Virus record (IMG/VR): IMGVR_UViG_3300026521_000471
Span: 160,468 to 224,467 of that record
DNA length: 64,000 nucleotides
Strand: one strand, 5' to 3'
Shown piece by piece: positions 29,887 through 61,775 of this stretch; within the stretch, counting starts at the first letter, position 1; each line of letters starts with the position of its first letter. Position numbers and translations under genes: made by a program. Under the pieces are notes generated by a model. It searched no databases and was not told where the DNA came from. It saw only the letters and a list, made by a program, of their open reading frames with translations.

Positions 29887-30465
29887 TTAGTTGTCAAGAG
29901 TTTCTAAGTATTTAGACATCTCTTTGAATTTATCTTCATAATCCATATATGTATATTCCACGAATAAAACAATTTCGGCAAAACTATCTAAAATTTCTTG
30001 TACATCTTTCATATCGAGACCTAAAAGTGCATATGGTGAATGTTTGTGAGCGATAATGTTTCTAAGCTTGTTAAACATTTGTAATAAATGTTTATCATTA
30101 TTTGGAATATCTAAGAGATTCAATAATTGAGACATTGTTAAATCTGATCTTTTTACTATTTTGAAATCATTAGCATCACATGCATATCTCATTAGTAAAA
30201 TAGTAGTAAGTTTAGTATGAGTATTTAATACTAAATCATTAGCTATTAATATATCATAAGTTGCTTTATCAATTTTTCTAAGTATTGATTTTGGGGTATT
30301 TGGAGTTTGTGGCATCATTATATATTTAAAATTTTTTATTCCAGAACGAACACACGTACTAAAATCTCCTGTAAAAATAGCTATATCTAAAGGCATTGAT
30401 ACACTATAAGATTTTATTCTTTCAATTAGTAAAAGTTGTTCCATACTATTCAATCTTTTTAACAT
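29887..30465 (-). CDS. hypothetical protein with RNxxxH (HEPN-like) motif
   Basis: LRNIIAH matches HEPN Rx4H; nothing else recognised. Confidence 0.5.
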   Translation of the reverse strand: MLKRLNSMEQLLLIERIKSYSVSMPLDIAIFTGDFSTCVRSGIKNFKYIMMPQTPNTPKSILRKIDKATYDILIANDLVLNTHTKLTTILLMRYACDANDFKIVKRSDLTMSQLLNLLDIPNNDKHLLQMFNKLRNIIAHKHSPYALLGLDMKDVQEILDSFAEIVLFVEYTYMDYEDKFKEMSKYLETLDN

Positions 30466-30511
30466 TGTTTACCCCTTTGATTAATTATACCTATATTATA
30501 ACATATTATAG

Positions 30512-31276
30512 TTAATATGTCAATAGTTCCGGTTCTCTTTTTGCAATTTTCAATAATACTAATAGTGTATAATAACTATCATTACCCCCATTATGTAAAT
30601 GAATTGGTTTTACCCCTATAATACTCTCTACTAAAGTTTTTAAATTGTGGGTCTTATTTTCTAATAGATATAATGGTGCAAATCGTTGAGTATCCAATAC
30701 TGCTATATTATCAATATCAATATCACAACTGTATAAAAATGGTTTATCATTACCAAAAGCATGTCCTACTAAAAAGTCTGTACCTTTGAAAAGTACTCCA
30801 ACTATTACTTGTATTGCTTCTAATGGTAATATTTGAGATTCTCCATAATCGAAGTGGAATTTATTATCTGGTACAAATCGACCATTTTTAAATTGTTTAG
30901 TTTCTAATACTATAAAATGATATGCTTGGATTTTTTCATCTTCAAAAATAGTAATACCTACTTCTGTAAGTTGTCTTGTTGTTTCGTGGAATTCTAAATC
31001 CATAGAAAATAATTTTTTACCTTGGATTTTTTCATTTAATTCTGATAACACTTCTGGGGCAGAACTAACTTTTTGTTCCCATTTGAGTTGATTTTTGATT
31101 CTTCTTTTTAACCGTTTGATAGGTTTATTATATTTTGCAAATTTTCTTAGTAATAATTTATCTTCTGGAGTATAAAGAGTATAATCAATAGTATGTAAAT
31201 ATTCGATTTTATTTTGTTCTTCTGGAGTGATATTTGATTGAAGTTCTTCTTCTAAAATTGTTAATTGAGTTTTCAT
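30512..31276 (-). CDS. DEDDh 3'-5' exonuclease-like protein
   Basis: SMDLEF, LVGHAFGND, LDTQ, LHNGGNDSYYT. Confidence 0.8.
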   Translation of the reverse strand: MKTQLTILEEELQSNITPEEQNKIEYLHTIDYTLYTPEDKLLLRKFAKYNKPIKRLKRRIKNQLKWEQKVSSAPEVLSELNEKIQGKKLFSMDLEFHETTRQLTEVGITIFEDEKIQAYHFIVLETKQFKNGRFVPDNKFHFDYGESQILPLEAIQVIVGVLFKGTDFLVGHAFGNDKPFLYSCDIDIDNIAVLDTQRFAPLYLLENKTHNLKTLVESIIGVKPIHLHNGGNDSYYTLLVLLKIAKREPELLTY

Positions 31277-31335
31277 TATATCCCTTTGATTAATTATAAT
31301 ATATTATACCATAAAAAGGGAAATAATACAAGCTT

Positions 31336-31914
31336 TTATATCCTCTCACAAGGATTTTTAGCTTTTAATTTTGTTAGTTTTTTATCTACTGTTTTAATGA
31401 GTTGTCTAGGATGAATATACCCTTTTGATCTCTCTGCTATAAATGAAGCTCCTTGTAACGAGCTAAGATCTTCTTTTACTTGTTTAAATGATTTGACAGT
31501 ATCTCTTACAATAATTGCAAATTCATCGCCACCAATTCTATATACTTGGTCAATAGAGAATTTTTTTCTAAGTTGCTCTGCTACTGATATAATTAGATTA
31601 TCTCCTGCTTCCATACCTTCTATTTTATTAATATTATGAAGGTTATTAATATCAATCAATACAAATGTAAATTGAGCATCTGTAAATTCATGTTCTTCAA
31701 ATACTCTATCTAATTTATCATTGAAATCTTGTTTACCCATAAGACCTGTCATTGAATCAAATTTATATTTTTTAACTAATCTTTCTAGGTATGTAATACG
31801 CTCTAAATAAAAACCAATTGCCTCACATGATTGAGGTTGGCCACATGGTGTATCTAAAGAAACTTCTCCATCTTTTGAAGAGAAAATGATTTTGTCCTTT
31901 TTTTGAGTTTTCAT
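31336..31914 (-). CDS. GGDEF-domain diguanylate cyclase
   Basis: DSMTGL, IDINNLHNINKIEGMEAGD, YRIGGDEFAI. Confidence 0.85.
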   Translation of the reverse strand: MKTQKKDKIIFSSKDGEVSLDTPCGQPQSCEAIGFYLERITYLERLVKKYKFDSMTGLMGKQDFNDKLDRVFEEHEFTDAQFTFVLIDINNLHNINKIEGMEAGDNLIISVAEQLRKKFSIDQVYRIGGDEFAIIVRDTVKSFKQVKEDLSSLQGASFIAERSKGYIHPRQLIKTVDKKLTKLKAKNPCERI

Positions 31915-32071
31915 AAATGTCCTTTTATTTAATGTTACCTATATTATAACATATTTTGCATTAAAAGTCAAGAGTTTTGGGGTAAATTTTGCAGAAAAAA
32001 ATGAGAGGGGAAGAACCCTCTCTAATTATGGCGATGGAAGAGATAATCTCTTCACATTTATATTATACAAT

Positions 32072-32986
32072 TTATGCATTTGTTAAAATGTATTTCGCTG
32101 CATCCTTCCACATTGGATTACCACTATATGAAAATGCTACTTTGATAAGTTTTTCAAATGTTCTCATATTGAGTTCTTTTGCTTCAAATTTATGTTCATC
32201 GATAAACTCTAGCACTTCTTCTTTTAGTGATAAATCATAATCCGGCAAAATATGAGTTACAATAGCTTTCATTCTATCGATACGATCTTGGATACTCATT
32301 GTAACATCAACTGCAAGTGTTCTACCTCTTACAGCTTTATCAATTTTCGGTAAAGAGATATTTGAGATAAAAATCACTTGACCTTCAAAATCAAATGAAC
32401 TTGGTAAACCATCATCAATAAAACCTTTTGATAACCAACTAATAGTTCTCTTTGCATATGAGTCCAGAGCACCTTTTAGAATGTTAAGTGATACAGGATC
32501 TTTCAATACACTATCACAATCATCAAAGATAACCACTTTATCTTTATTTTCATAAAGAGTTGCATACAATGCTTTTGGTGTTGCATAACCTTTGATAATA
32601 ACATAATCAGCATCTTCTTCAAGATTATTTTTATCAAGGATTTCAAGAACGGTATGAGATTTCCCTAAACCACTTTGTCCGCAGATAAGTAGTGAACTTG
32701 TAATGTTTGATAATGTCATATTTACAAATTGATCAAGGAAAGCAAAACGCTCATTAATATCAAATTCTGATTGTGCTTCTGTAAGTGGTGTAAGTGGTGT
32801 TTGAGAATTTGATTGAACTGCTTTATCCAATACAGTAATTGTTCTTGTTTCGATACTAGGTTTACAAATATGTCCACCTAAACTAAATGTACCATCTGCT
32901 TTGAGTTTACGAGTATGGACTTTTGCTCCTGTGTTTATTGTAAATTGAACTTCGTTTTGTGAATGATCTACATAATTTAATACCAT
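32072..32986 (-). CDS. AAA-type ATPase
   Basis: GQSGLGKS, VIFDDCD, NILKGALD, IFISN. Confidence 0.8.
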   Translation of the reverse strand: MVLNYVDHSQNEVQFTINTGAKVHTRKLKADGTFSLGGHICKPSIETRTITVLDKAVQSNSQTPLTPLTEAQSEFDINERFAFLDQFVNMTLSNITSSLLICGQSGLGKSHTVLEILDKNNLEEDADYVIIKGYATPKALYATLYENKDKVVIFDDCDSVLKDPVSLNILKGALDSYAKRTISWLSKGFIDDGLPSSFDFEGQVIFISNISLPKIDKAVRGRTLAVDVTMSIQDRIDRMKAIVTHILPDYDLSLKEEVLEFIDEHKFEAKELNMRTFEKLIKVAFSYSGNPMWKDAAKYILTNA

Positions 32987-33049
32987 TGTTAGTATTCCTT
33001 TTCTTTAATTATGCCATATTATAACATAACTTGACTAAAAAGTCAAGTT

Positions 33050-33508
33050 TTACGCTAATTCTTCTTCAAAAAGAAGCTCATAAATCAATGCGCTAGTAAG
33101 AGATTTACCGTTTACAGTAATTCGGATATTAATGTTTTGCACATACAACATAAGTTCGTTTCGTTTCCATGCTGCAATTTCTTCCTCTGTTGGTTCGCAG
33201 TTATCAACATTTACAAATTTATTTGTCCATAAGAATTCATCATCTGCATATGTTCTCAATTCATCTTTTAATGAGTCTAAATCAAAATCTACTAACACCT
33301 CTTTTTCAAAGTACTCTTCTAGATTTACAAGCAGTTCTTCTCTTAGATTTTCTGGTTCTACATGCCATAACATTTTCTCATTAGACCAATGATTTACATG
33401 ATCTAATTCACCTTCCAAATAATCATCTTGAAATACATCTACAAATGAAGAAATCTCTACTGTAAAAGTATCACTCACTAAATTTCTAATTTTTTGAATA
33501 GTTTCCAT
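33050..33508 (-). CDS. acidic hypothetical protein
   Basis: 152-aa ORF. Confidence 0.6.
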   Translation of the reverse strand: METIQKIRNLVSDTFTVEISSFVDVFQDDYLEGELDHVNHWSNEKMLWHVEPENLREELLVNLEEYFEKEVLVDFDLDSLKDELRTYADDEFLWTNKFVNVDNCEPTEEEIAAWKRNELMLYVQNINIRITVNGKSLTSALIYELLFEEELA

Positions 33509-33713
33509 TTTTATTCCCCCACTTTATTTTTTAACTCTTTGATTTTTGGTAAAACTTCTGATATATTTTGAGCTCCAACTTCCAACATAACCTGCATAAT
33601 AATATCCGATAATTTAACAGTTGCTTCAGACCATTGATTTTCTAATTTTTTATTTGACATTGTTTACACCTTTTATTTAAATTACTATATTATACTATAT
33701 TTTTAGAAATAAA

Positions 33714-34265
33714 TCAAGCCGTTTCATACTCTTTTTGAGATAAAACCTCTTTACATTTATTACAGCGATAAGTAGCTGTGCCTCTTAGGATTTTATTATG
33801 TCTCACAGTAGATAAGTTATGAGTATCACAAGCACAATAATAAGTATGAGTGTTTTTTCTTTTTGATTCTAAAATTGTACTACCAGAAAATAGTGATGTT
33901 GAAGCTTTACCACTTATACCAAAATGTGAACAAACCGCCTTAAACTCTTTACCATGTGGCATAACTCTCTTATACCCATTTCGACCTGTTGGGTATAAGT
34001 TTCTAACAACAGCATGGGCAAATTCATGAATCACTACCGCTGTTATATAAGTATCACCAAACTCTAAAAGTAACTCTTTGTTTAATTCAATGTAATTAAT
34101 TGTTTCACCGTATGCAGACGATTGATAAAATTGACCTAATGCTCTAACACTTTTTAATGTATAAACCACATCATAATCAAATTCTACATCCCATTCTTTT
34201 TTAGCATATTTAGCCAATTCATCTAGTTTCTTATCAACTTTTGTAGAGAGAGTTTTGAAATCCAT
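33714..34265 (-). CDS. SprT-like zinc metalloprotease
   Basis: HEFAH, PHGKEFK, YYCAC, RHNKI, YRCNKC. Confidence 0.88.
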   Translation of the reverse strand: MDFKTLSTKVDKKLDELAKYAKKEWDVEFDYDVVYTLKSVRALGQFYQSSAYGETINYIELNKELLLEFGDTYITAVVIHEFAHAVVRNLYPTGRNGYKRVMPHGKEFKAVCSHFGISGKASTSLFSGSTILESKRKNTHTYYCACDTHNLSTVRHNKILRGTATYRCNKCKEVLSQKEYETA

Positions 34266-34572
34266 CTTTTACACCTTTTCTTTAATTATGCCATATTATA
34301 CCATAAAAATAAAAAAATATCAAATTAAAAACATGATTTCTTTGTCTGTTAGTGGACGTCCTAATTGCTTGATAGTTTGTTCAATTAATAACTTATGAAA
34401 TTTTTTATCGATCTCTTCTTTTGTTAATCTTTTATCTTTACAGCTTTTAGACATTTTATTACCTTTATAATTAGATTTAAAGATGAGGACTACTATCGAT
34501 AAACATAAAATCATCTATCCCCCCATGATAAACAAAGTAAGTATTTTAAATCCTCACCTTCAAATCTAATAG

Positions 34573-34830
34573 TTAAACTATTAGAAATGGTTGTGCATAA
34601 GTTCCATTAGAAATTCTTTTATAACTTAGGTCGGTTTCAAAAGCTCTAATTTCATATGTATCATCATCTGTAAGCACCAATCTTACAGATGATTCCTTAC
34701 CATAGACTTCCTCAGTTTCTGAATCAACCATACGAATTTTACTATCTATGGTTAATACTCTACCGTTAATATCTTTGATTTTTAAAGCAATCATTTTAAT
34801 TATCCTCTTGCTCTTCACCAGTTTCATCAC
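34573..34830 (-). CDS. hypothetical protein
   Basis: Real start probably near 34794. Confidence 0.5.
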   Translation of the reverse strand: MMKLVKSKRIIKMIALKIKDINGRVLTIDSKIRMVDSETEEVYGKESSVRLVLTDDDTYEIRAFETDLSYKRISNGTYAQPFLIV

Positions 34831-35317
34831 TTACAACTACCACACCTTCACCATAAGTACTTTCAACAACCATTTTAATTGGTGCCATATCAGGCATTAC
34901 AACTGGATAATCCTTTGGATAGTGTTCAAGTTTAGAGATAAGATCAGCAACTGTAATAACTGATGGGATATGTTCTTGTATAAATTCTTTTAGCTCTTCT
35001 TGAAAATCTTCAAGTACACCTACTTCTCTCAAATCTGTTTCAAGCTGAAAATCATAATCGGTATTATTGATATTAATTTCGCTCTCAAGCACAGTAACAA
35101 TCATATCTTGAATAGTACCATAGATTAGTTCTTCTTCACCAACATTAACACTATCGATAAATATTTGGAGTGAATTCATATTAATAGTAATTCCTTCATC
35201 CATTTGATACTCAACCATTGCTTCAAAAGTACAGCCAATTTTATGACCATCTATTACACCTTCGATTTTATCACCTACCATAATACCATATGTTTGATAC
35301 ATAACTTCTGCATTCAT
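34796..35317 (-). CDS. acidic hypothetical protein
   Basis: AAGG RBS. Confidence 0.6.
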   Translation of the reverse strand: MNAEVMYQTYGIMVGDKIEGVIDGHKIGCTFEAMVEYQMDEGITINMNSLQIFIDSVNVGEEELIYGTIQDMIVTVLESEININNTDYDFQLETDLREVGVLEDFQEELKEFIQEHIPSVITVADLISKLEHYPKDYPVVMPDMAPIKMVVESTYGEGVVVVSDETGEEQEDN

Positions 35318-35320
35318 TTT

Positions 35321-35524
35321 TTATACCTTTGCTGTTTCTTTTTGAGCTATCTCTTTAATAACTCTTAGATAACCATTTAGATTCAATAACATAAGCTCTT
35401 TGAGAGTGATTAGTCTCTCTCCTCTATTAAGTATAAGTTCTTCACCTTTTAGGAACTGTTGAGATGGTATTTCTACCAAATCATTAGCTTCATTTACTTT
35501 AACTAAAATATCTAAATGACTCAT
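35321..35524 (-). CDS. hypothetical protein
   Basis: AAGG RBS. Confidence 0.55.
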   Translation of the reverse strand: MSHLDILVKVNEANDLVEIPSQQFLKGEELILNRGERLITLKELMLLNLNGYLRVIKEIAQKETAKV

Positions 35525-35534
35525 TTTTTATACC

Positions 35535-35963
35535 TTATGCGTGGATGTCTAGTTGTGAAACTGTTTTGTATTCTTCACAACCGAATTTAGATTCTGCAAT
35601 TTTTCTTGCTAGTAATGAACTTGTACTAGCTTCTCTTTGGAATGCTTGTAATAAAACATCATTCTCATTTTTTAGTTCTTTAATACGCTCTTCTTGCTTT
35701 CTGATAGTTTTTAAATGTTTATCATTTGTCTGCTCATAACTAAAAAGAGCATCATCTTGTGCTTTATATTTCATAAGCTTTTTGATTTCCTCTGATTGCT
35801 TTTTAACAACACCCATTAAAAACTCTGATGACTGTTCTTTTAACTCTTTATTTTCAGCTTTTAGTACTGCTACCTCAGCTAATAAATCGTTATAATCTCT
35901 TTTGATATTTTCCCAATCAGTTTTTGCAATTTTAACATATTTTGAACTAAACATTTTATACAC
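35535..35963 (-). CDS. coiled-coil protein
   Basis: Promoter cassette upstream; start probably at MFSSKY. Confidence 0.6.
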   Translation of the reverse strand: MYKMFSSKYVKIAKTDWENIKRDYNDLLAEVAVLKAENKELKEQSSEFLMGVVKKQSEEIKKLMKYKAQDDALFSYEQTNDKHLKTIRKQEERIKELKNENDVLLQAFQREASTSSLLARKIAESKFGCEEYKTVSQLDIHA

Positions 35964-35995
35964 CTTTTCTTTAATTATGCCATATTATAACATAT

Positions 35996-36298
35996 TTACG
36001 ATCTTTTGTCAACCATTTTAGGTGTTTTACTTGACGAATTGAAAAAATTTCCTTGAGGTGTTTTTTCATAAAATTTAATATATTTGTATCCTTTGCGAGT
36101 AATACGATAAACATTATCAACTACTTCCACCAAACCTTTCTCTCTCATAGCTTGATAGGTCATACCTTTTTTCTCAACCGTTTTAACTTGTTTAGTAGTT
36201 ATCTCTTCACCGTTATTCAACTTTACTAAACTATCCCAGTAGTAAGTAGTACCACTCTTTGTAATAGGTCTTGTTAGGGAATATCGTTCTTTTCTCAT
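35996..36298 (-). CDS. basic protein, possible winged helix
   Basis: KGLVEV..YRITRKG motif. Confidence 0.55.
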   Translation of the reverse strand: MRKERYSLTRPITKSGTTYYWDSLVKLNNGEEITTKQVKTVEKKGMTYQAMREKGLVEVVDNVYRITRKGYKYIKFYEKTPQGNFFNSSSKTPKMVDKRS

Positions 36299-36352
36299 CT
36301 TGTATCCTTTTTATTTAAGTTAGATATATTATATCATAATTTAGTTTTTTTA

Positions 36353-36721
36353 TCAAGCATTTTCGAGGTTTTCTAATCGTTCTTGAAGTTTTTTAATTTC
36401 TTTTTGTAACCGTCTAGTTAGTTTTTTAGCAATTTTTTTATACTCTTTTTCCATATGATTTTGAGCTTCTTCTTTACTATAAAAATATCTATCTTTAACA
36501 GATTCATAATCTTTAATAATCTTACCTGTTTCTACATTTTCTAAGAGAACAGCTTTTGCATATCTACCATCGTAAATACCTTTAAAAATATACTCTGTAA
36601 CCTTCTTAGTTTTAGACGATTTAACAAAGTCCAATCCCGTATCATCCAACTCAAATTCTGTCGGGTAATAAATATGATCACCTTCTACTAGATTCTTCTT
36701 TAATACGATATTAGATTCCAT
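36353..36721 (-). CDS. hypothetical protein
   Basis: AGGAG RBS. Confidence 0.6.
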   Translation of the reverse strand: MESNIVLKKNLVEGDHIYYPTEFELDDTGLDFVKSSKTKKVTEYIFKGIYDGRYAKAVLLENVETGKIIKDYESVKDRYFYSKEEAQNHMEKEYKKIAKKLTRRLQKEIKKLQERLENLENA

Positions 36722-36730
36722 ATTTTTCTC

Positions 36731-37354: not shown

Positions 37355-37370
37355 AATTTTATCCTCTCTA

Positions 37371-54068: not shown

Positions 54069-54121
54069 TTTATTTCCTAATTTTAGATATAATTATATAT
54101 ATTTAAATTAAAGGAACAATT

Positions 54122-54511: not shown

Positions 54512-54574
54512 AAAGCTTGACTTTTTAGTCAAGTTATGTTATAATATGGCATAATTAATCAAAAGGATAACAAA

Positions 54575-54850: not shown

Positions 54851-54861
54851 GGATAGAGGTC

Positions 54862-55080
54862 ATGACAATTTTATTAACAGCATACAACCCTAACTTTAGT
54901 GATAAAGTTAAAGCTAATATTAGTGCTAAAGTTGAGCCTACTATGGTTTCAACCCATAGCGATAGTCAATCATTCGATTTGGAAGCTGCAGTAAATATTA
55001 TTACTCATTTTGGAAATGATAATGATCAAGAGATTCTAGAAAATTTGAATCAACAACATGTGGATTATATTGAATTTTAA
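54862..55080 (+). CDS. hypothetical protein
   Basis: RBS present. Confidence 0.55.
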   Translation: MTILLTAYNPNFSDKVKANISAKVEPTMVSTHSDSQSFDLEAAVNIITHFGNDNDQEILENLNQQHVDYIEF

Positions 55081-55150
55081 TTCAAAATACTTGACTTTAT
55101 ACCTAAATTAGGGTATAATATATTATATAAAAAGAAAAGGATAAAAACAA

Positions 55151-55465
55151 ATGCCATTAACAAAAGAAATCAAAATGGGAATTTACACTAAAGGTTCTGG
55201 GATTAGACTTATCGGTGAATTAGATTTAATCACTCAAGATGAAGGCCATAAAGATGAAGCGATTTATTTGGTTACAATGGCCATGATGAGAGACCCGAGA
55301 GAACCAATCGGTGAAAAAGAGATGAAAGAATACGAAAATGCTGTCAAATCTATGTTTAGAGATCATAGACATGATTATAAAGCTAAAGATCGTGCTGAAG
55401 CAGATAAATTCATTGAATATAATATAGGGTCTTGGGAAGAAGTAAGATCTCTATCTAAAATCTAA
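55151..55465 (+). CDS. hypothetical protein
   Basis: Promoter cassette upstream. Confidence 0.6.
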   Translation: MPLTKEIKMGIYTKGSGIRLIGELDLITQDEGHKDEAIYLVTMAMMRDPREPIGEKEMKEYENAVKSMFRDHRHDYKAKDRAEADKFIEYNIGSWEEVRSLSKI

Positions 55466-55552
55466 AACCCTTTGTGGACTTTTTGAGCCGGTAAGTCCCT
55501 TATAAAGAAACATGGCAATTCCTTTGTAAGAAACTCTATACACTATAACACT

Positions 55553-55661
55553 TTGTGGAAAGAGATGGGAACATCTGGTGGAGGGGCTATCTCTTCCACA
55601 ATAGTAAGAATAGTGAAGATGAATTTGGGTGGTGTGCACTTTTTCATCTTCACTATTCTTA
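55553..55661. other. two adjacent long hairpins (candidate structured RNA)
   Basis: 13-bp stem with one bulge (55553-55601); perfect 19-bp stem (55605-55623/55643-55661). Confidence 0.65.
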
Positions 55662-55685
55662 TTGTATAATAAATAGTAGAAAACT

Positions 55686-56708
55686 ATGGAGTTATATATG
55701 CCTCAATCAAAAACAATCAAAATACAAGTTTGGACAGATTTAAATTATTGTAGAGTAATTGGTATATGGTATCCTGAAGAACCAGAAGATGCTATTGATT
55801 TTAATGATGCACCATATCTGTTAGTATTATCTAGTATTTTTGAACCTCGTACTGAAGTTATGGGTAATAATCCTATTGCACCAGGTCAACATCCAATACC
55901 TAAAGATTTTTTAGAAAAACAAATAAGACATATAAGTTATCTTTTTGCAAATGATTTTGGTACTTTTCAACCATATTCAAAAGGGATAGCAAAAACATTT
56001 TTAGCTAAACAAACTGTATCATATAAAAAAGTAAAAGAGTTTGATATGACCGTTACACCTGCATCTGGCTCTATATCATTAAAGGCATTTAGAGATAGTA
56101 TTGACCAATATACAGAAGAAGAACAAGAAGCTATCCAAGTAATGACTATTGGTGAAAATCCTCAAGATGCTCATGCTAAAGATATTGAAGATTTTATACA
56201 TATAGAAAAAAGCGATAACATTGAACAATATATCTCAATAACAAAACTTACCCCAGTTTATGGTATAGATGATCCATATATTGTTAAAACAAGTCTCCCT
56301 GAAGATCCTGCATTTTCATCTCTTCCTCCAGGTACAGAAGATGCAGAAGCATCACAAGAATTTATAGAAACCGTTGAAGCTGCAAAAACAGAAGATACAA
56401 TCAATAGAGAGACTTTAATAACTTATGATACTTTGTCTGAAACACCTCAACCCGTTCTTGATGAAAACGGTGAGCAAGTTCTTAATGAAAACGGTGAACC
56501 TGTTACCGAATTAAGAGAACCAACAAGAGAAGAAGTTTTAGAGGCTTTATTAAAAGATAAAGAGGCTCAAATTGCAGCCCTTCAACCTCAACCAGTAAAG
56601 GAAAAATTACCTCAACCATTATCAGAAGCAGATCTATTCCCAGAGGAAGCTGCAGACCAATTAGAAAGAGAAACCCTCAATACAACATTCACACCAAAAG
56701 AGATGTAA
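55686..56708 (+). CDS. acidic Pro/Glu-rich protein, possibly late/virion-associated
   Basis: AATAAATA and GGAG before ATG 55698; VLDENGEQVLNENGEP repeat. Confidence 0.6.
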   Translation: MELYMPQSKTIKIQVWTDLNYCRVIGIWYPEEPEDAIDFNDAPYLLVLSSIFEPRTEVMGNNPIAPGQHPIPKDFLEKQIRHISYLFANDFGTFQPYSKGIAKTFLAKQTVSYKKVKEFDMTVTPASGSISLKAFRDSIDQYTEEEQEAIQVMTIGENPQDAHAKDIEDFIHIEKSDNIEQYISITKLTPVYGIDDPYIVKTSLPEDPAFSSLPPGTEDAEASQEFIETVEAAKTEDTINRETLITYDTLSETPQPVLDENGEQVLNENGEPVTELREPTREEVLEALLKDKEAQIAALQPQPVKEKLPQPLSEADLFPEEAADQLERETLNTTFTPKEM

Positions 56709-56712
56709 TTTT

Positions 56713-56741
56713 TTGATAATGATTTTAATAATCATTATCAA
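56713..56741. promoter_or_regulatory. Fur-box-like palindrome D
   Basis: ttgataatgattttaataatcattatcaa, exact reverse complement of B. Confidence 0.65.
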
Positions 56742-56824
56742 TTAGCCCCCATTTAAATTAATAAACTTGACTTTTTACCTATTTTATGTTATAATATGGC
56801 ATAATTAAAGAAAAGGTGTAAAAG

Positions 56825-57169
56825 ATGATTATCACAACAAATAATGATATTAAAATCTACCAAATTTTTGAAGATATATATGATGGTATTGATAATTTTA
56901 TGGATATAGAAAGTCGTAATGTTATTGAACTTACAAAAATTATTATTAATAAAAACTCTCAGTTTAAGACACCAATATTTTTAGACAGTTATAGTAAAAG
57001 AATTGATAAATCATTTAAAAGAGAAACTGTGTGGTTTATTAAATGTGATAGTATAGTTTTTGATTGTAAAAGTGAAGAAATTGCAAATGCACTTTTTGAC
57101 AAAATTGCCTTAGTTTTAGAATTTGGCGATGAACCTTTAAAAACTGTCGATGACCTTTTTGTATTTTAG
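56825..57169 (+). CDS. hypothetical protein (C-terminal DDLFVF)
   Basis: Promoter cassette upstream. Confidence 0.6.
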   Translation: MIITTNNDIKIYQIFEDIYDGIDNFMDIESRNVIELTKIIINKNSQFKTPIFLDSYSKRIDKSFKRETVWFIKCDSIVFDCKSEEIANALFDKIALVLEFGDEPLKTVDDLFVF

Positions 57170-57178
57170 GAGTACATT

Positions 57179-57583
57179 ATGAAAATAACAAACAAAAAAT
57201 TACTATCAGAAATAAACAAAGTTCTCCCTTACAGTTGTTCTGCAGCCGAATCTAATAGTACTGATAGAGCTATATATGTTAGATGTAGTTCTTTACAGAC
57301 AAAACAATTAGAGCAATTAAAAACAAAAATCCTAAATCATCTCAAATCTCTACCATATATGGATGAAAGTGTGGATATTATATCTAGAGTTACAATCACT
57401 CAAAAACCTGTTCTAGATGGTTTCTATGTATTTGTATGGGGTAATAAAGAGGATGAAAAAAGTTTTCTAACTGCAAAACTTACTTTAGAAACTGAATCGT
57501 TATTAGATATTAAAAAACAGGAATTAGCATTACGAGAAAAAATGCTTTCTACCGTAGAAGCATTAGCTGCATTAAAGGACTAA
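57179..57583 (+). CDS. hypothetical protein
   Basis: AGGAG RBS. Confidence 0.6.
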   Translation: MKITNKKLLSEINKVLPYSCSAAESNSTDRAIYVRCSSLQTKQLEQLKTKILNHLKSLPYMDESVDIISRVTITQKPVLDGFYVFVWGNKEDEKSFLTAKLTLETESLLDIKKQELALREKMLSTVEALAALKD

Positions 57584-57585
57584 AA

Positions 57586-58140
57586 ATGGATAATTTAATT
57601 TTAAAATCATCTAATAAATTTAAAATCGATGAATTTAAACGCATCATAGGTGATACTCTTATAATTGAAAATGGAGAAGATTTACCTGAAGTTGATGGTA
57701 CTGCTGTTGAGGTTGTAATTTATAAATCAATTGCAGCAGGTAAAAATGTAATTGTCGAAGATACAACACTCACTATTGAAGGTGAAGAGGTAGTCGACAT
57801 CAAATGGAAAATTGAAGAATTGCAAAATAAATATTCACTAGTGCCAGCTATTTGGAAAACTTATCTTGCTTATAATGATGGAGAAGAAATTCGAGTATAT
57901 GAAGGTATAGTCAATGGTGTTATAATTCCAGATAGCAAAGATAAAGGATACGGATTTGATCCTTATTTTTTACCTGATGGAAGTGATCGTACTCTTGCTA
58001 AACTTTTAGATGACGGTGAAAAGGACAAATATAGTGCTAGACAAAAAGCATTGATCAATTTAGTTACTAATCATTTATTTGATAGAATACCAACAAAAAC
58101 AGTCCCTGTTTGGTCAGGAAAATATCAAAATCAAACTTGA
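57586..58140 (+). CDS. Ham1/RdgB-family non-canonical purine NTP pyrophosphatase
   Basis: SSNKFKIDE, DLPEV, VEDT.L, GYGFDPYF, KDKYSAR. Confidence 0.88.
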   Translation: MDNLILKSSNKFKIDEFKRIIGDTLIIENGEDLPEVDGTAVEVVIYKSIAAGKNVIVEDTTLTIEGEEVVDIKWKIEELQNKYSLVPAIWKTYLAYNDGEEIRVYEGIVNGVIIPDSKDKGYGFDPYFLPDGSDRTLAKLLDDGEKDKYSARQKALINLVTNHLFDRIPTKTVPVWSGKYQNQT

Positions 58141-58194
58141 CTTTTTACCTATTTTATGTTATAATATGGCATAATTAAAGAAAAGGTGTAAAAG

Positions 58195-58446
58195 ATGAAA
58201 AAGCTAGTTATATCAGTTGTTACAGATGAAGGTAAAAAATATATCAAAAAAGGATTCTTAGGTTCAAAGACAGTTAGTACAGTTGAACTAGAAGATGCAA
58301 CATTATATTCAAAACCTGATGATGTTGAATGGGTTTTAGCAAATTATGAACTACCTTCTCCAGTTATTGAAGTAGTCGATATTCAAATTTCAAAATCATT
58401 GGAATCTGCAAAAGAAAAATATTTAGCATATGCCGAAATGCTTTAA
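58195..58446 (+). CDS. hypothetical protein
   Basis: Promoter cassette upstream. Confidence 0.6.
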   Translation: MKKLVISVVTDEGKKYIKKGFLGSKTVSTVELEDATLYSKPDDVEWVLANYELPSPVIEVVDIQISKSLESAKEKYLAYAEML

Positions 58447-58456
58447 AGGATAAAAG

Positions 58457-58663
58457 ATGAATTTAGAAGAAAGAATTAATAAAAGAGCAAAAGAGATAGA
58501 AGCCTCATTTCCGATGGATGTTGAAGCTGTTGCAATTGATGTTGAAGAAGATGGCAACAACACTTATGTAAGTTGGATTGTTTTAGATAATAGTATCTAT
58601 GATGTCACACATGCTCAAATTAGAAACTTCGATGAAAAATTAGAAGGGGTAGAAAATGAATAA
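58457..58663 (+). CDS. small acidic protein
   Basis: AAGGA RBS. Confidence 0.55.
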   Translation: MNLEERINKRAKEIEASFPMDVEAVAIDVEEDGNNTYVSWIVLDNSIYDVTHAQIRNFDEKLEGVENE

Positions 58664-58907
58664 TATATCTTCATTACCAGAAGAGGTAGATCATTTCTTA
58701 GCAGACTTAGCACAATATGGTTCAAATCCAGAAATAGACTATAATGATATTATTAATTTTGCAAATGCAAATGATACAGATAGTATTCTATCAATAAAAG
58801 CTCATATTGCAGATATAGCAGAGTTAGATTTTGATTTTGAAGATGATGAAGTAATTATCTCTTTAGATGCAATAGCTTCTTTAGTAAAAAATACTGAAAA
58901 CTCTTGA
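58656..58907 (+). CDS. small acidic protein, paralog of 45248-45496
   Basis: Visible similarity. Confidence 0.65.
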   Translation: MNNISSLPEEVDHFLADLAQYGSNPEIDYNDIINFANANDTDSILSIKAHIADIAELDFDFEDDEVIISLDAIASLVKNTENS

Positions 58908-58961
58908 CTTTTTACTCAAATAATGTTATAATATGGCATAATTAAAGAAAAGGTGTAAAAG

Positions 58962-59192
58962 ATGAAAAGATTCAAAGTGATTAAAGAATCGGAAAACTTT
59001 GGAAGAGAAGTTGTTTATGAAGCAGATAATAGAGAGGATGCAGAAACTTCTCTTATCGATTGTATAGCATGTACAATCTCAAACTTCGATGAGTATAGTT
59101 GTGATGATATTGATGAAATTCAATATCAAGGTTTTGAAGGTTATGGTAATGGAATCATATACATAGAAGATGATGGTATCAAACCATTTTAA
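58962..59192 (+). CDS. small acidic protein
   Basis: Promoter cassette upstream. Confidence 0.6.
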   Translation: MKRFKVIKESENFGREVVYEADNREDAETSLIDCIACTISNFDEYSCDDIDEIQYQGFEGYGNGIIYIEDDGIKPF

Positions 59193-59208
59193 TAAGAAAG
59201 GGTAAAAA

Positions 59209-59523
59209 ATGTTAATTTTTTCTAAACAAGTCTTTGAAGTTGATTTTGAAATTGAAGATACTTCTATTGAAGGAAAATACCAATATTCTACACAAACTGA
59301 CAACTTTGTCGGGTATGAGTATAATACAGAGGTTGAACTAAATTCAGATATTAAAGTTGAATCAGACATTGCAACAACCATCCTCGATAGTGATGATATT
59401 GAAAATATTATCGAGGAAATGGATATTGATTATGCAATGGACGAAATTCTTATCATATCTAAACAGGATATAGCAGATTATATCGGTGCAGATACAATTA
59501 AATCAATTAAAGTACAGGAGTAA
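59209..59523 (+). CDS. small acidic protein
   Basis: AAGGG RBS. Confidence 0.6.
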   Translation: MLIFSKQVFEVDFEIEDTSIEGKYQYSTQTDNFVGYEYNTEVELNSDIKVESDIATTILDSDDIENIIEEMDIDYAMDEILIISKQDIADYIGADTIKSIKVQE

Positions 59524-59526
59524 AAT

Positions 59527-59721
59527 ATGAATCCTAAAGCATTTAACATCATCTTCTGGGGAATTTTCTCAATATCACTCATTTCTATCATAGTACAAAT
59601 GGTAGTAGTAGGGTGGTTAGGTGTAACGGCAGTTAAAGAAGTTCAAGATAACAATGGAAGTGTAGGACAAACTATCGGTAAATTTATCGGTGATGTTCAA
59701 AAAGGCATGAAAAGTAACTAA
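59527..59721 (+). CDS. small membrane protein
   Basis: Hydrophobic helix; AGGAG RBS. Confidence 0.6.
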   Translation: MNPKAFNIIFWGIFSISLISIIVQMVVVGWLGVTAVKEVQDNNGSVGQTIGKFIGDVQKGMKSN

Positions 59722-59784
59722 ATTGCTTGACTTTTTACTCAAATAATGTTATAATATGGCATAATTAAAGAAAAGGTGTAAAAA

Positions 59785-60060
59785 ATGAATATCGAAAGAG
59801 TAGTAAATACAATAGCAAACAATTTAGTTGACCAAGAGGTTTTAAATGAAGCATTAGAGGCTATCGAAAATGATGATATGGATAACCAATCATATTGGCA
59901 AGCAGCAGGCTCAATCGTTGAACCGGAATTAAATTCGGAAGATGAAGAAGAGTATTTTGAAATGTTGGAAAATGATCCTCAAAACTGGATAGGTTTTATC
60001 ACTAGCATCGATGAAAGATTTCTTCCAATTGCTGAAAAAGTTGTAGAGTACGGATATTAA
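59785..60060 (+). CDS. small acidic protein
   Basis: Promoter cassette upstream. Confidence 0.6.
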   Translation: MNIERVVNTIANNLVDQEVLNEALEAIENDDMDNQSYWQAAGSIVEPELNSEDEEEYFEMLENDPQNWIGFITSIDERFLPIAEKVVEYGY

Positions 60061-60061
60061 A

Positions 60062-60277
60062 ATGTTTTCTACAATCTGGAAAAAAATCACAAGTCCCTTA
60101 TACAAAAAAGGGACTGTAAATTTTGGTAATGGTCAAATAGATGCATTACAAAATAAACTAACTAAAAGAGTTATTATCGATCTATCAAATGATACAATGA
60201 ATCAACTCTTCAAAGAAAAAAAATCTTATGATACATTTTATAATGAAGATGGGTATGGAATGGAAGGGATAAAATAA
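60062..60277 (+). CDS. hypothetical protein
   Basis: Coupled in operon. Confidence 0.5.
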   Translation: MFSTIWKKITSPLYKKGTVNFGNGQIDALQNKLTKRVIIDLSNDTMNQLFKEKKSYDTFYNEDGYGMEGIK

Positions 60278-60690
60278 TGTTACCATTACTATTATTTATT
60301 TTAGGTGCTTCGTTAGGTGATACATATACATTAGGCGCAGTTATTGCTAATGGTGCAAATGTAGTTTCGTATCTATATTTATTTTTAATCATTATTGTAG
60401 TCTTTATTGTTGGTCTATCAGGAACTTCATTAGGACTACAAATGTCAAGAGGTTCTTCTTCATTACAATCATTAATGATGGGTATGGCTGGTTCAGGTAT
60501 AGGTGTTTTAACAGGTCTTTGGATTATTCTTAGAACAGTTATTATGTATATACTTTTATACTATATATCAATGACAGACCATTTCATTACAGAGTTCAAT
60601 CAGTTACCTGCTACAACTATTATGGCGATACTATTGTTCTTTATTCTTTACTATACAAGAACTACAAAAGTATCAATTAAAAGATCTTGA
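60277..60690 (+). CDS. multi-TM membrane protein
   Basis: About 4 hydrophobic segments. Confidence 0.6.
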   Translation: MLPLLLFILGASLGDTYTLGAVIANGANVVSYLYLFLIIIVVFIVGLSGTSLGLQMSRGSSSLQSLMMGMAGSGIGVLTGLWIILRTVIMYILLYYISMTDHFITEFNQLPATTIMAILLFFILYYTRTTKVSIKRS

Positions 60691-60748
60691 CTTTATCCCC
60701 TTTTTATGGTATAATAATATATCATAAAAATAAAGGGAGATAATAAAA

Positions 60749-61054
60749 ATGAAAATTCAAAAAATAGAAGCTTACAAAACAACAGATGATAAAATCTTTG
60801 ATAATATAGAAGATGCAGAAGATCATCAATATATCCTAGAACTACCAGCAAATGAAAATCAACATTTATCTAAAAGAGAACAAGAAGTATTTAACTATCT
60901 AACTAAAACCTCTTTAGAAAATAAAGAGATAGCAGAAAAACTTGGTGTTACTCTTACTACTATCAAAGCACATAGCAAAAAAATCTATGAAAAAACAAAT
61001 ACAAAAAATCGTATAGAATTACTTATAAATCTTCAAAAAGAGTTGACTTATTAA
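60749..61054 (+). CDS. LuxR-type HTH regulator
   Basis: LSKREQEVF..NKEIAEKLGVTLTTIKAHSKKIYEK..NRIEL. Confidence 0.88.
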   Translation: MKIQKIEAYKTTDDKIFDNIEDAEDHQYILELPANENQHLSKREQEVFNYLTKTSLENKEIAEKLGVTLTTIKAHSKKIYEKTNTKNRIELLINLQKELTY

Positions 61055-61103
61055 TTATACTATGGTATAATATAGTATATTTAAAGAGAAAAGGATTTAA
61101 AAA

Positions 61104-61775
61104 ATGTTTACATCAACACTAACTCATAACCAACTTATCAAAAGTGGATTAATCATAAATGGTAATTTTAGAGGATCTATCGCATCTAAAGAGTTAATAA
61201 CATTATCAAAAAGAGCAGAATCATATGTTAAAAGTATTATGGGAGAAGATCACTCTTTATCACCATTATATCTATTTGCCGATTCAAAACATAATGGTGA
61301 AATCCTTACTAAGATTTGGAGAGAGTTAGTAATTAATACAGAGTTTGACTCGACGGAAAATGTTGAAAAAATCTCAAGCAGTAAAGCATATAAAATATCT
61401 GTACCGGCATACTTCATTACAGAAGTAGTTATCAAAAAGAAAGGGTATGTTACAAAAGTAAATAATTTCATAAAACGATTTTATACAGCAATAAGTGTTT
61501 ATGAATCTGCTCAAAAAACATTTGAAGAAAGAGAAGGAGTGAGACTAGACTGTTATCCTCCTATACAAAGACAATCAAGTAGAGAACTATATGAATTGGT
61601 GGATGCATATATTACAAAATTGGTCTCACTTATTGAAGAAAAAACATTTGAAAACAAACTCAAAGAGTTTAACTTTGTAGATAGCATTTTAATAGACGGC
61701 AAATACCTTTCTTCAACGGCGGAAGGCAAACTATATTTTGTAGATAAAAAAGAGAAAACTATCGAAAAAGCTTGA
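61104..61775 (+). CDS. hypothetical protein
   Basis: Promoter cassette upstream. Confidence 0.6.
   Translation: MFTSTLTHNQLIKSGLIINGNFRGSIASKELITLSKRAESYVKSIMGEDHSLSPLYLFADSKHNGEILTKIWRELVINTEFDSTENVEKISSSKAYKISVPAYFITEVVIKKKGYVTKVNNFIKRFYTAISVYESAQKTFEEREGVRLDCYPPIQRQSSRELYELVDAYITKLVSLIEEKTFENKLKEFNFVDSILIDGKYLSSTAEGKLYFVDKKEKTIEKA

What the first reader, a model, noticed from the sequence alone, without database searches (positions are those of the whole stretch)
29887..61775. Genes end inside the -35 box of the next cassette
Seen: the TGA stop is the TGA of (C)TTGA(C/T) for ORFs ending at 33714, 36353, 54068, 58140, 58907, 60690 and 61775. In ORFs ending at 29887 (LDN*), 30512 (LTY*), 35996 (VDKRS*) and 61054 (LTY*), TTGAC lies within the last codons. 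Inference: cassette junctions fall at the CTTGA edge, so the repeat supplies the stop for captured genes, as attC sites can. Simple genome compaction is the alternative.
Basis: partly seen in the sequence, partly recalled or inferred. Interest (0 to 1): 0.6.

Follow-up and report, generated by a model that had tools for sequence, protein, structure and literature searches.

The report
Stop codons inside phage promoter boxes
In the early-gene region of an uncultured 224-kb phage, 28 near-identical strong promoters are packed so tightly against the preceding genes that eight genes use the TGA inside the promoter's TTGAC box as their stop codon. This looks like extreme genome compaction around promoter repeats that may also serve as gene-shuffling junctions, not an integron-like capture system.

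Summary

**What is there**
- The window is the last 64 kb of a 224-kb, 27% GC viral record.
- Window 29.9-62.3 kb holds 28 promoter-leader repeats in two divergent arms: C-TTGAC(T)-N17-TGnTATAAT, then a conserved leader and ribosome-binding site.
- Conservation starts sharply at the C before TTGAC.

**Where the upstream genes stop**
- 8 stop on the TGA of TTGA.
- 4 stop 8-14 nt inside the promoter spacer.
- 9 stop 4-13 nt upstream of the -35.
- Eight of 21 clustered stops at one position gives p = 3.5e-7.

**Comparison with a syntenic relative (85-91% nt identity)**
- 5 of the 8 TGA overlaps and all 4 internal overlaps are inherited.
- The other 3 lie at junctions where gene content differs.
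- The Ham1 gene ends in its own TAA in four relatives. Here it gains one residue and stops on the -35 TGA.
- No C-terminus is truncated or replaced.
- Indels between the two phages end at the -35 edge, in the spacer, in the leader or at the ATG.
- Leader variants are genome-specific, which indicates concerted evolution.
- No tyrosine recombinase and no attC-like structure were found.

**Verdict:** compaction against a functional boundary, in an array closest to the PeSL regulatory cassettes of T4-type phages. Moderately interesting.

The parts
29869..47443 (-). Minus-strand arm of the promoter array. It has 15 promoter-leader units with -35 T1 at 29897, 30523, 31971, 33046, 33717, 34323, 36012, 36356, 38088, 40292, 42103, 43214, 45861, 46670 and 47443.
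   Evidence: Pattern scans and consensus scans. Nearly all units have orthologues in the relative.
49706..62330 (+). Plus-strand arm of the array. It has 13 units with -35 T1 at 49706, 53151, 54065, 54517, 55091, 56767, 58137, 58904, 59727, 60687, 61043, 61772 and 62271.
33714..33718 (-). CTTGA: the stop of the SprT-like gene (33714-34265, 183 aa) is the TGA of the -35.
   Evidence: The overlap is conserved in the relative (L025 601).
34320..34324 (-). TTTGA: the stop of the 64-aa ORF (34320-34514) is the TGA of the -35 TTGATA.
   Evidence: Conserved in the relative (L025 1210).
36353..36357 (-). CTTGA: the stop of the 122-aa gene (36353-36721) is the TGA of the -35. This gene is absent from the relative.
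   Evidence: In the relative the same promoter follows the 207-aa gene, whose TAA lies at -9.
54064..54068 (+). CTTGA: the stop of the 286-aa gene (53208-54068) is the TGA of the -35.
   Evidence: Conserved in the relative (L016 5192).
58136..58140 (+). CTTGA: the stop of Ham1/ITPase (57586-58140, 184 aa) is the TGA of the -35. Synteny with the relative ends at 58133.
   Evidence: The orthologues end one codon earlier on their own TAA.
58903..58907 (+). CTTGA: the stop of the 83-aa gene (58656-58907) is the TGA of the -35.
   Evidence: Conserved in the relative (L016 11702).
60686..60690 (+). CTTGA: the stop of the 137-aa gene (60277-60690) is the TGA of the -35.
   Evidence: Conserved in the relative (L016 13370).
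61771..61775 (+). CTTGA: the stop of the 223-aa ORFan (61104-61775) is the TGA of the -35. The gene is absent from the relative.
29887..29897 (-). The -35 TTGACA lies inside the last codons (..LDN*) of the 192-aa gene, with TAA at +8 in the spacer.
   Evidence: Conserved in the relative (REL 6851).
30512..30523 (-). The -35 lies inside the last codons (..LLTY*) of the DEDDh exonuclease gene (254 aa), with TAA at +9.
35996..36012 (-). The -35 lies inside the last codons (..VDKRS*) of the 100-aa gene, with TAA at +14.
61043..61054 (+). The -35 lies inside the last codons (..ELTY*) of the 101-aa GerE-type gene, with TAA at +9.
58134..58450 (+). Lineage-specific module: promoter 58137 plus an 83-aa ORFan. 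In the relative it is replaced by a 76-aa gene, a promoter, a 113-aa gene and another promoter.
61103..62287 (+). Lineage-specific module: 223-aa gene, promoter 61772, 143-aa gene, then the -35 and part of the spacer of promoter 62271. In the relative it is replaced by a 517-aa gene. The left junction is at the ATG and the right junction is inside the promoter spacer.
36364..36763 (-). Lineage-specific segment holding the 122-aa gene with its own RBS. The promoter-side junction lies 7-8 nt 5' of the -35.
33511..33670 (-). Lineage-specific 49-aa ORF. Its junctions lie in the promoter leader and at the ATG of the next gene.
49620..49710 (-). Remnant of the last 25-30 codons of a Rep3 initiator gene that is intact in the relative. 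The deletion ends exactly at the C|TTGAC edge of promoter 49706.

Best explanation
Window 29.9-62.3 kb is the host-polymerase-dependent (presumably early) gene region of an uncultured jumbo phage. It is inferred to be transcribed from 28 copies of one strong sigma-70/sigma-A-type promoter with a conserved 5' leader and ribosome-binding site, arranged in two divergent arms.

The region is extremely compact. Deletions and rearrangements have brought each upstream gene up to, or a few bases into, the first base that the next unit cannot lose: the C before TTGAC. The consensus -35 contains TGA, so a gene abutting it in that frame needs no stop of its own. This gives the recurrent arrangement NCT-TGA-C with 54 nt to the next ATG in four of the eight cases. 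Genes in the other two frames keep a stop 4-13 nt upstream or use a TAA in an altered spacer.

The repeated promoter-leader units probably also act as linkers for homologous or microhomology recombination, by which small genes of unknown function are gained, lost and swapped, as described for PeSL cassettes of T4-type phages.

**Shown:** the anatomy, the statistics, inheritance of most overlaps, one gene (Ham1) that swapped its own TAA for the -35 TGA, one deletion ending exactly at the -35 edge, and genome-specific leader variants.

**Inferred:** early timing, read-through transcription, and the recombination mechanism.
For: - **Distribution of the units.** 28 units lie only in this 32-kb region.
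- **Extent of the repeat.** Conservation runs from C(-1) to the RBS at about +49.
- **Position of the stops.** Stops cluster at -13..+14, with 8 at +1.
- **Spacing between genes.** Same-strand gaps in the array are bimodal: 16 nt or less (no promoter) or 46-70 nt with a mode of 54 (promoter unit). The region is 90% coding despite 28 promoters.
- **Gene content.** It includes rIIA, an rIIB-like gene (named from the Phage_T4_rIIB hit on its 375-aa orthologue in the relative; the window's own copy had no Pfam hit), SIR2, Ham1, SprT, a DEDDh exonuclease, Rep3 initiators and many ORFans.
- **Inheritance.** The relative REL is 85-91% identical. 5 of 8 TGA overlaps and 4 of 4 internal overlaps are conserved, and REL has 6 TGA(+1) junctions among 27 promoters.
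- **Ham1.** It has its own TAA in REL, L028, L018 and L029, and +1 residue plus the -35 TGA here.
- **Deletion end point.** The Rep3 deletion ends at C|TTGAC, with CTT microhomology.
- **Indel junctions.** ORFan indels and replacements have junctions at the -35 edge, in the spacer, in the leader or at the ATG.
- **Concerted evolution.** The leader variant ..GGTGTAAAAGATG occurs 4 times here and never in REL. ..GGTGTATAAGATG occurs 4 times in REL and never here, at orthologous sites. Some paralogous units are more alike than their orthologues.
- **Distant relative.** L009 has the same kind of array with roomier junctions, and only 1 of the 10 junctions that could be scored there is a TGA overlap.
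Against: - Promoter activity, early timing and read-through are therefore inferred from sequence.
- Indel break points would fall in intergenic DNA under selection alone. About half of the array's non-coding DNA is promoter units, so the excess of break points at units does not by itself prove repeat-mediated recombination.
- Most units match their orthologue better than any paralogue, so homogenisation is limited.
- Only about 7 of 28 units carry a significant stem-loop, unlike typical PeSLs.
- Polarity (insertion or deletion) is known only for Ham1 and the Rep3 deletion.
Confidence: 0.7

Rival explanations
1. Pure compaction. The stop/-35 overlaps arise only from small deletions under packaging or replication economy. 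The repeats play no part in recombination, and break points at units only reflect selection for intergenic junctions.
For: - The Rep3 deletion ends at the -35 edge with 3-nt microhomology.
- Operon-internal junctions are equally tight (20 gaps of 16 nt or less, six of them overlaps).
- Most overlaps are inherited.
- Most promoter units are closest to their orthologue.
Against: - Genome-specific leader variants are shared by 4 paralogous units each.
- Paralogues have identical spacers that differ from their orthologues.
- One replacement has its junction inside a promoter spacer.
- 4 of 9 lineage-specific junctions already use TGA(+1).
Confidence: 0.2
2. Integron-like site-specific capture. The repeat is an attC-like recombination site cut at C|TTGA by a dedicated recombinase, and captured genes lack stops and borrow the TGA.
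For: - The repeat has a sharp edge at C(-1).
- Three lineage-specific junctions (122-aa gene, Ham1/promoter, 223-aa gene) use the TGA.
- One REL-specific segment is inserted exactly at C|TTGAC.
Against: - No Phage_integrase family gene is present in the 224-kb record, and the control was positive in 14 of 14 genomes.
- Junctions are scattered: -8, -3, the -35 edge, the spacer, the leader and the ATG.
- The C|TTGAC junction is a deletion end with a gene remnant.
- C-termini are complete.
- The units are promoters, and most do not fold.
Confidence: 0.04
3. Regulatory coupling. Ending translation exactly at the -35 is selected for a function, for example keeping ribosomes off read-through RNA that must fold into the -35 hairpins or attenuators, or setting a fixed 54-nt untranslated leader on read-through transcripts.
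For: - The stop-to-ATG distance is 54 nt in four of the eight TGA(+1) cases (gaps computed from the coordinates).
- About 7 units have stem-loops overlapping or abutting the -35. Two look like terminators whose U-tract is the promoter spacer: 38087-38120 and 62245-62270.
Against: - Most TGA(+1) units have no significant hairpin.
- 9 genes stop upstream and 4 stop downstream with the same promoter type.
- The 54-nt spacing follows automatically from the fixed length of the repeat.
Confidence: 0.05
4. Chance or gene-calling artefact. The ORFs are not real genes, or TGA is not a stop in this phage.
For: Several of the ORFs are short and have no known family.
Against: - Ten of the 12 genes have full-length orthologues at 75-93% amino-acid identity ending at the same residue.
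- Ham1, SprT and DEDDh domains are complete.
- Ham1 orthologues stop on TAA one codon before the TGA.
- The position test gives p = 3.5e-7.
Confidence: 0.01

Closest known systems
PeSL (promoter-early stem-loop) regulatory cassettes of T4-type phages RB49/phi1, T4/PST and KVP40/nt-1 (PMC2839356, PMC4122927)
   Same: - Repeated strong sigma-70-consensus early promoters lie in the intergenic spaces of an ORFan-rich region.
- Each unit runs from the upstream stop codon, through an A-rich stretch, the -35 and the -10, to the Shine-Dalgarno sequence and ATG.
- Insertions, deletions and replacements between close relatives are bounded by the units, and some cross-overs fall between the -10 and the ATG or within the unit.
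   Different: - The stem-loop/terminator part is present in only about 7 of 28 units.
- The upstream stop is pushed into the -35 itself or into the spacer in 12 of 28 units. [quoted passage not shown]
- The phage is a 27% GC uncultured jumbo phage whose rIIA is at most 34% identical to any cultured phage.
- Mini-circles were not tested.
Host-takeover module of Bacillus phage SPO1 (Stewart et al. 1998, as summarised in PMC6873191)
   Same: A cluster of mostly small early genes in short operons, each with promoters and ribosome-binding sites typical of highly expressed genes and read by the host polymerase.
   Different: - No sequence homology was shown.
- The array here is about 32 kb with 28 promoters in two divergent arms, against 12.4 kb in SPO1.
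- Its position relative to the genome ends is unknown, because the record is linear and 85% complete.
- I know of no report of systematic stop/-35 overlap in SPO1 (from memory, not tested).
Integron gene cassettes and attC sites
   Same: A repeated element separates short genes. Gene content varies between relatives at the repeats. The repeat can contribute the last bases of the upstream reading frame.
   Different: - No IntI-type recombinase.
- The repeat is a promoter plus leader, not an imperfect palindrome with a GTTRRRY core.
- Every unit has its own promoter.
- Junction positions vary.
Stop/start and stop/RBS overlaps (ATGA, TAATG) in compact prokaryotic and phage operons
   Same: The same principle applies: the gene end is pushed into the next functional element. 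The promoterless junctions of this array show it as well (gaps of -35 to +16 nt).
   Different: Here the overlapped element is a transcription signal in DNA (the -35 hexamer), not a translation signal, and the overlap recurs at one fixed position of a repeat.

Membership tests
Integron (attC gene cassettes) | An IntI tyrosine recombinase encoded with the array | tested here: not met
   PF00589 has no match in the 224-kb record, while the control rang in 14 of 14 genomes. The record is 85% complete, so absence is not absolute.
Integron (attC gene cassettes) | The repeat is an imperfect palindrome (R''-L''...L'-R') with conserved core sites that folds as a single strand | tested here: not met
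   The consensus is C-TTGACT-N17-TGnTATAAT followed by a leader and RBS. Only about 7 of 28 units give a stem-loop with z of -2.3 or below, and those are short hairpins centred on the -35.
Integron (attC gene cassettes) | Cassettes are promoterless and expressed from one common promoter | tested here: not met
   Each of the 28 units is a 10-12 of 12 match to the sigma-70 consensus, 25 of them with an extended -10 TG.
Integron (attC gene cassettes) | Cassette junctions fall at one fixed position of the repeat | tested here: not met
   Junctions against the relative lie at -8, -3, the -35 edge, inside the spacer, in the leader and at the ATG.
PeSL regulatory cassettes (T4-type phages) | A repeated strong sigma-70-like early promoter with an A-rich upstream region, bounded by the upstream stop and the downstream SD and ATG | tested here: met
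   The definition is taken from PMC2839356.
PeSL regulatory cassettes (T4-type phages) | A stable stem-loop (terminator or attenuator) as part of each unit | tested here: not met
   A significant stem-loop is present in about 7 of 28 units only: 33046, 38088, 43214, 47443, 54517, 61772 and 62271.
PeSL regulatory cassettes (T4-type phages) | Indels and replacements between closely related phages are bounded by the units | tested here: met
   Five ORFan-level differences have at least one junction at or inside a unit. Selection for intergenic junctions is not excluded as the cause.
PeSL regulatory cassettes (T4-type phages) | Recombination between units, giving mini-circles or chimeric units | tested here: inconclusive
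   Genome-specific leader variants shared by 4 paralogues each, and identical paralogous spacers, suggest exchange between units. Read-level joints could not be examined.
PeSL regulatory cassettes (T4-type phages) | The host genome is a T4-type myovirus | tested here: inconclusive
   rIIA, an rIIB-like gene (Phage_T4_rIIB hit on the relative's orthologue) and a T4-type RNA ligase are present. The Gp23 and Portal_T4 models gave no match, but their controls were silent. The best cultured rIIA match is at most 34% identical.
SPO1-type host-takeover module | A cluster of small early genes with strong host-type promoters and strong RBS, located in the terminal redundancy | tested here: inconclusive
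   The promoter, RBS and small-gene features are met. The terminal position cannot be judged on a linear, incomplete record. No homology was tested.

The most novel reading that the evidence does not exclude
The promoter-leader repeat is an active recombination linker in a phage lineage unrelated to the T4-type phages where PeSLs were described. Embedding the stop codon in the -35 would then make each gene plus its downstream promoter edge a self-contained, portable unit. Any cross-over within the 50-nt repeat would transfer the gene with a ready-made stop and hand the next gene an intact promoter. This would be a general, recombinase-free cassette system for exchanging early genes in jumbo phages.
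Probability: 0.2. Interest if true: 0.55.

Novelty: new variant of a known kind. Interest (0 to 1): 0.35.

Why it matters
- **Compaction limit.** It shows how far compaction can go in a phage early region. A transcription signal doubles as a translation stop at a fixed position of a repeat, giving a minimal promoter-containing gap of 54 nt.
- **Wider reach of PeSL-type architecture.** It extends this architecture (repeated early promoters as junctions of ORFan gain, loss and swap) to an uncultured low-GC jumbo phage lineage.
- **Annotation.** In such arrays the gene end predicts the promoter. Gene callers that forbid overlap with regulatory motifs, or promoter finders that mask coding sequence, will miss one or the other.
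- **What it is not.** It does not reveal a new recombination system.

Tried and rejected
- **Cultured phages.** Megablast of 8 kb of the array against cultured phage records gave no match.
- **Repeat in IMG/VR.** An exact search for the -10 plus leader repeat gave no match outside the own record.
- **IMG/VR relatives.** The rIIA protein found only distant relatives at 33-44% identity. One of them, L009, served as an independent comparison.
- **Whole record of the close relative.** The genome search with L016 as handle failed because the record is not held. I walked along the contig with the look-up of encoding contigs instead.
- **Read-level evidence.** No read-level test of recombination joints or transcription was made, and I did not try another route.
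- **The 223-aa ORFan.** It has no homologue apart from a fragment of itself, so its C-terminus cannot be compared.
- **DEDDh exonuclease.** The word search found only one close relative beyond the query itself; the composite relative's orthologue came from L026.
- **T4-type membership.** The Gp23 and Portal_T4 family searches gave no signal and had silent controls, so they are uninformative.
- **Alternative genetic code (TGA as sense).** Rejected. Coding density is 89% under table 11, and Ham1 orthologues stop on TAA one codon before the TGA.
- **Global TGA enrichment in the array.** Rejected: 19% inside against 18% outside. The excess is confined to promoter-adjacent genes.
- **Random run-in model.** If ORFs read into the repeat in any frame and stopped at the first stop, two thirds would end at about +35 to +39 in the leader. 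None does.
- **Known RNA families.** Rfam found none in the leaders.

Full report
**Context.** The window is the last 64 kb of a 224,467-bp IMG/VR virus record. The record is linear, about 85% complete and about 27% GC. No cultured phage is close: megablast found nothing, and the rIIA protein (38109-40235) is at most 34% identical to any cultured phage. The region named in the finding carries genes typical of an early or host-takeover region:
- rIIA, and an rIIB-like gene (51950-53074). The rIIB name rests on the Phage_T4_rIIB hit to its 375-aa orthologue in the relative; the window's own copy gave no Pfam hit.
- SIR2 and two Rep3-type initiators.
- A SprT-like protease, Ham1/ITPase and a DEDDh exonuclease.
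- AAA ATPases and many small ORFs with no family.

**The observation.** A scan for TTGANN-N16-18-TATAAT over the whole record finds 28 units with a common architecture, all between window 29,897 and 62,271:
- 15 lie on the minus strand (29897-47443) and 13 on the plus strand (49706-62271). The two arms diverge from a 240-nt region at 49.47-49.70 kb.
- Hits outside this region lack the TG extension and the leader.
- The consensus is C-TTGACTTTTTA..-TG-TATAAT-ATgGcATAATTAAAgAAAAGG, followed by 6-10 nt and ATG.
- Information content is 0.4 bits or less upstream apart from two conserved A positions at -18 and -16 (about 0.7 bits each), jumps to 1.74 bits at the C at -1, and stays high to the ribosome-binding site at about +49.

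**Where upstream genes stop.** Positions are relative to the first T of the -35 (0-based, so +1 is the TGA of TTGA).
- At +1: 8 junctions (33714, 34320, 36353, 54068, 58140, 58907, 60690, 61775).
- At +8 to +14: 4 junctions (29887, 30512, 35996, 61054). Their spacers carry a TAA, unlike the T-rich consensus spacer.
- At -4 to -13: 9 junctions.
- Farther away: the remainder.

**Statistics.**
- Eight of 21 clustered stops at one of 28 positions gives p = 3.5e-7.
- Eight of the 12 genes that enter the -35 are in the TGA frame, p = 0.019 against one third.
- TGA is used by 10 of 27 promoter-adjacent genes and 1 of 30 internal genes in the array, p = 0.0017.
- TGA use overall is the same inside and outside the array, 11/57 against 51/280.

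**What a simple run-in model predicts.** In the canonical unit the other two frames stay open to about +35 or +39. If ORFs simply read into the repeat in a random frame, two thirds would end there. None does. Genes in those frames have their own stop just upstream.

**Compaction elsewhere in the array.** Same-strand gaps are bimodal. They are either 16 nt or less (20 junctions, six of them overlaps) or 46-70 nt with a mode of exactly 54 nt, which is the TGA(+1) arrangement. The array is 90% coding in spite of 28 promoters.

**A close relative.** The Ham1 protein led to a syntenic metagenomic phage (ENA ERZ27262648 k141_25039, also assembled in JGI 3300026484). I assembled 50 kb of it from overlapping loci as "REL". 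It aligns to window 26-64 kb at 85-91% nucleotide identity.
- REL has 27 promoters of the same family, 6 with TGA(+1) and 4 with stops at +8 to +14.
- Five of the window's eight TGA overlaps are at orthologous junctions in REL: after SprT, the 64-aa ORF, the 286-aa gene, the 83-aa gene and the 137-aa gene.
- All four internal overlaps are also at orthologous junctions.
- Ten of the twelve genes have full-length orthologues at 75-93% amino-acid identity.

The overlap is thus a stable, inherited state of real genes.

- *Ham1 (57586-58140).* It ends ...GKYQNQT and stops on the -35 TGA. Homology with REL stops at 58133, three bases before the -35. In REL the gene ends ...GKYQNQ on TAA and runs straight into the RBS of a 76-aa gene with no promoter. 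A third relative (L028, 71% identity) has the REL arrangement. Two more distant ones (L018, L029) also end on their own TAA.
- *Ham1 subfamily.* Across 38 homologues the W.GKYQN tail is a conserved motif, and ends vary by 0-2 residues beyond it.
- *The 122-aa gene (36353-36721).* It is absent from REL. There the same promoter follows the 207-aa gene, whose TAA lies at -9. Its distant homologues of 118 and 123 aa end within 1-4 residues of the same place.
- *SprT and DEDDh.* The domains are complete by Pfam.

The promoter does supply the stop, but nothing is truncated or replaced. Homologues have near-identical C-termini with a different stop context.

**Junctions of gene-content differences.**
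1. A 49-aa ORF (33511-33660) is present only here. Its junctions lie in the leader and at the next ATG.
2. The 122-aa gene. Its promoter-side junction lies 7-8 nt 5' of the -35.
3. A 1.39-kb segment with a Rep3 gene is present in REL only. It joins exactly at C|TTGAC of promoter 49706. The window keeps the last 25-30 codons of that Rep3 gene at 49620-49710, so this is a deletion in the window's lineage. It ends at the promoter edge, with CTT microhomology.
4. Downstream of Ham1, the promoter plus 83-aa ORFan here replaces a 76-aa gene, a promoter, a 113-aa gene and a promoter in REL. The left junction is at -3 of the -35 and the right junction is at the RBS.
5. The 223-aa gene, a promoter and the 143-aa gene here replace a 517-aa gene in REL. 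The left junction is at the ATG after a shared leader. The right junction is inside the spacer of promoter 62271.
6. Differences unrelated to the units: a Rep3 duplication, an extra 232-aa gene and an IS605-type TnpB in REL, and a decayed 64-aa gene in REL.

Among nine lineage-specific junctions on the 5' side of a promoter, four use TGA(+1).

**Do the repeats recombine?**
- The leader variant ..AAAGGTGTAAAAGATG occurs four times in the window and never in REL. ..AAAGGTGTATAAGATG occurs four times in REL and never in the window, at orthologous sites.
- Several paralogous units within one genome have identical spacers that differ from their orthologues, for example 58904 and 59727 here, and 40741 and 41246 in REL.

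This is the signature of concerted evolution, meaning sequence exchange between units. Against this, most units are still closest to their orthologue. Break points would in any case be confined to intergenic DNA by selection, and about half of that DNA is promoter units. I therefore treat repeat-mediated shuffling as likely but not proven.

**Mechanism.** The most economical account is compaction against a functional boundary. Deletions and rearrangements are tolerated up to the first base the next promoter needs. Because consensus TTGAC contains TGA, a gene fused to it in that frame needs no stop of its own. Genes in the other frames keep a stop a few bases upstream or use a TAA in a changed spacer. 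The Rep3 deletion is a direct example of a deletion that stopped at the -35 edge, and Ham1 is a direct example of an own TAA exchanged for the promoter's TGA. Most junctions leave no room for a terminator, so I infer read-through and nested transcripts. Seven units have stem-loops that overlap or abut the -35. Two of these look like terminators whose U-tract is the promoter's own T-rich spacer, at 38087-38120 and 62245-62270.

**Comparison with known systems.**
- *PeSL cassettes of T4-type phages (closest).* These are repeated sigma-70 early promoters bounded by the upstream stop and the downstream SD and ATG. They carry a stem-loop, and recombination between them inserts, deletes and swaps ORFans and forms mini-circles (PMC2839356, PMC4122927). 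The present array shares the promoter repeat, the unit boundaries and the pattern of differences between relatives. It differs in lacking the stem-loop in most units, in having the stop moved into the -35 or spacer, and in its lineage.
- *SPO1 host-takeover module.* It is functionally similar (PMC6873191).
- *Integrons.* The analogy fails on every defining feature tested: no tyrosine recombinase, no attC-like palindrome, a promoter in every unit, and variable junction positions.
- *Distant relative L009 (47% GC).* It has its own promoter-repeat family with an A7 upstream element. Its stops lie 32-88 nt upstream, and only 1 of the 10 junctions scorable there has a TGA overlap. The overlap is therefore a feature of this compact lineage, not of such arrays in general.

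**Limits.** No transcription or read-level data could be obtained. Early timing and promoter activity rest on sequence alone. The host is unknown. Polarity is established for only two events.

**Verdict.** This is a new variant of a known kind of phage regulatory-cassette architecture, of moderate interest.

Noticed in passing
window 20970-21351 (-): A full-length tmRNA gene (Rfam RF00023, 115 bits; tag peptide ANTKLYIPQTARVAA) is encoded by the phage just upstream of the array.
   Followed up: partly
window 62271-62700 (+): The last promoter of the plus arm (62271) has no ORF behind it. It leads into about 300 nt of non-coding sequence and then a perfect 46-nt tandem repeat of 2.6 copies at 62578-62695. 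The segment is conserved in the relative at 85%. With Rep3-type initiator genes nearby, this could be a transcribed origin with iterons or a non-coding RNA.
   Followed up: partly
window 43518-44678 (+), 50612-51832 (-), 49620-49710 (-); L025 10001-13278 and 18229-19422: The copy number of Rep3-family initiator genes differs between the two phages. The window has two intact genes plus one remnant. The relative has five, including a tandem pair and one next to SIR2.
   Followed up: partly
L016 6706-7893; window 55502-55653; G000 45833-47020: An IS605-family TnpB (OrfB, Cas12f-like TNB domain) is inserted in the relative's array between the 104-aa and 336-aa genes. The window's phage has an 84% identical copy elsewhere in its genome, so the element is mobile within this phage lineage. 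The JGI assembly of the relative breaks at this insertion.
   Followed up: partly
window 33029-33047, 54516-54533, 61769-61790, 38087-38120, 62245-62270: Some units carry a palindrome made of the -35 and its inverted copy in the spacer (CTTGACT-TTTT-AGTCAAG; AGCTTGATT-AATA-AATCAAGCT). Two junctions have long hairpins ending in the -35, with the T-rich spacer as a possible U-tract. This would be terminator and promoter sharing bases.
   Followed up: partly
L018 9590-9665, 12205-12281; L009 whole locus: More distant relatives have their own, unrelated promoter-repeat families. In L018 the repeat TAATTTAAACTTAGTTTAATATTAACCTGTTATAAT begins with the TAA stop of the upstream gene. L009 uses gcAAAAAAAgnC-TTGACA-N17-TATAAT-CAAyCCATCAAAGAGAGA.
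   Followed up: partly
window 59527-59721 (+): This 64-aa predicted membrane ORF is a decayed pseudogene in the relative (ATG changed to ATA and an internal deletion of about 104 nt), while the promoter after it is kept.
   Followed up: yes
window 49766-50611 (+), 31336-31914 (-): The early array encodes a SIR2-family protein as the first gene of the plus arm. It also encodes a 192-aa protein whose orthologue in the relative is flagged as GGDEF (PF00990). Both are possible host-signalling or counter-defence functions.
   Followed up: no
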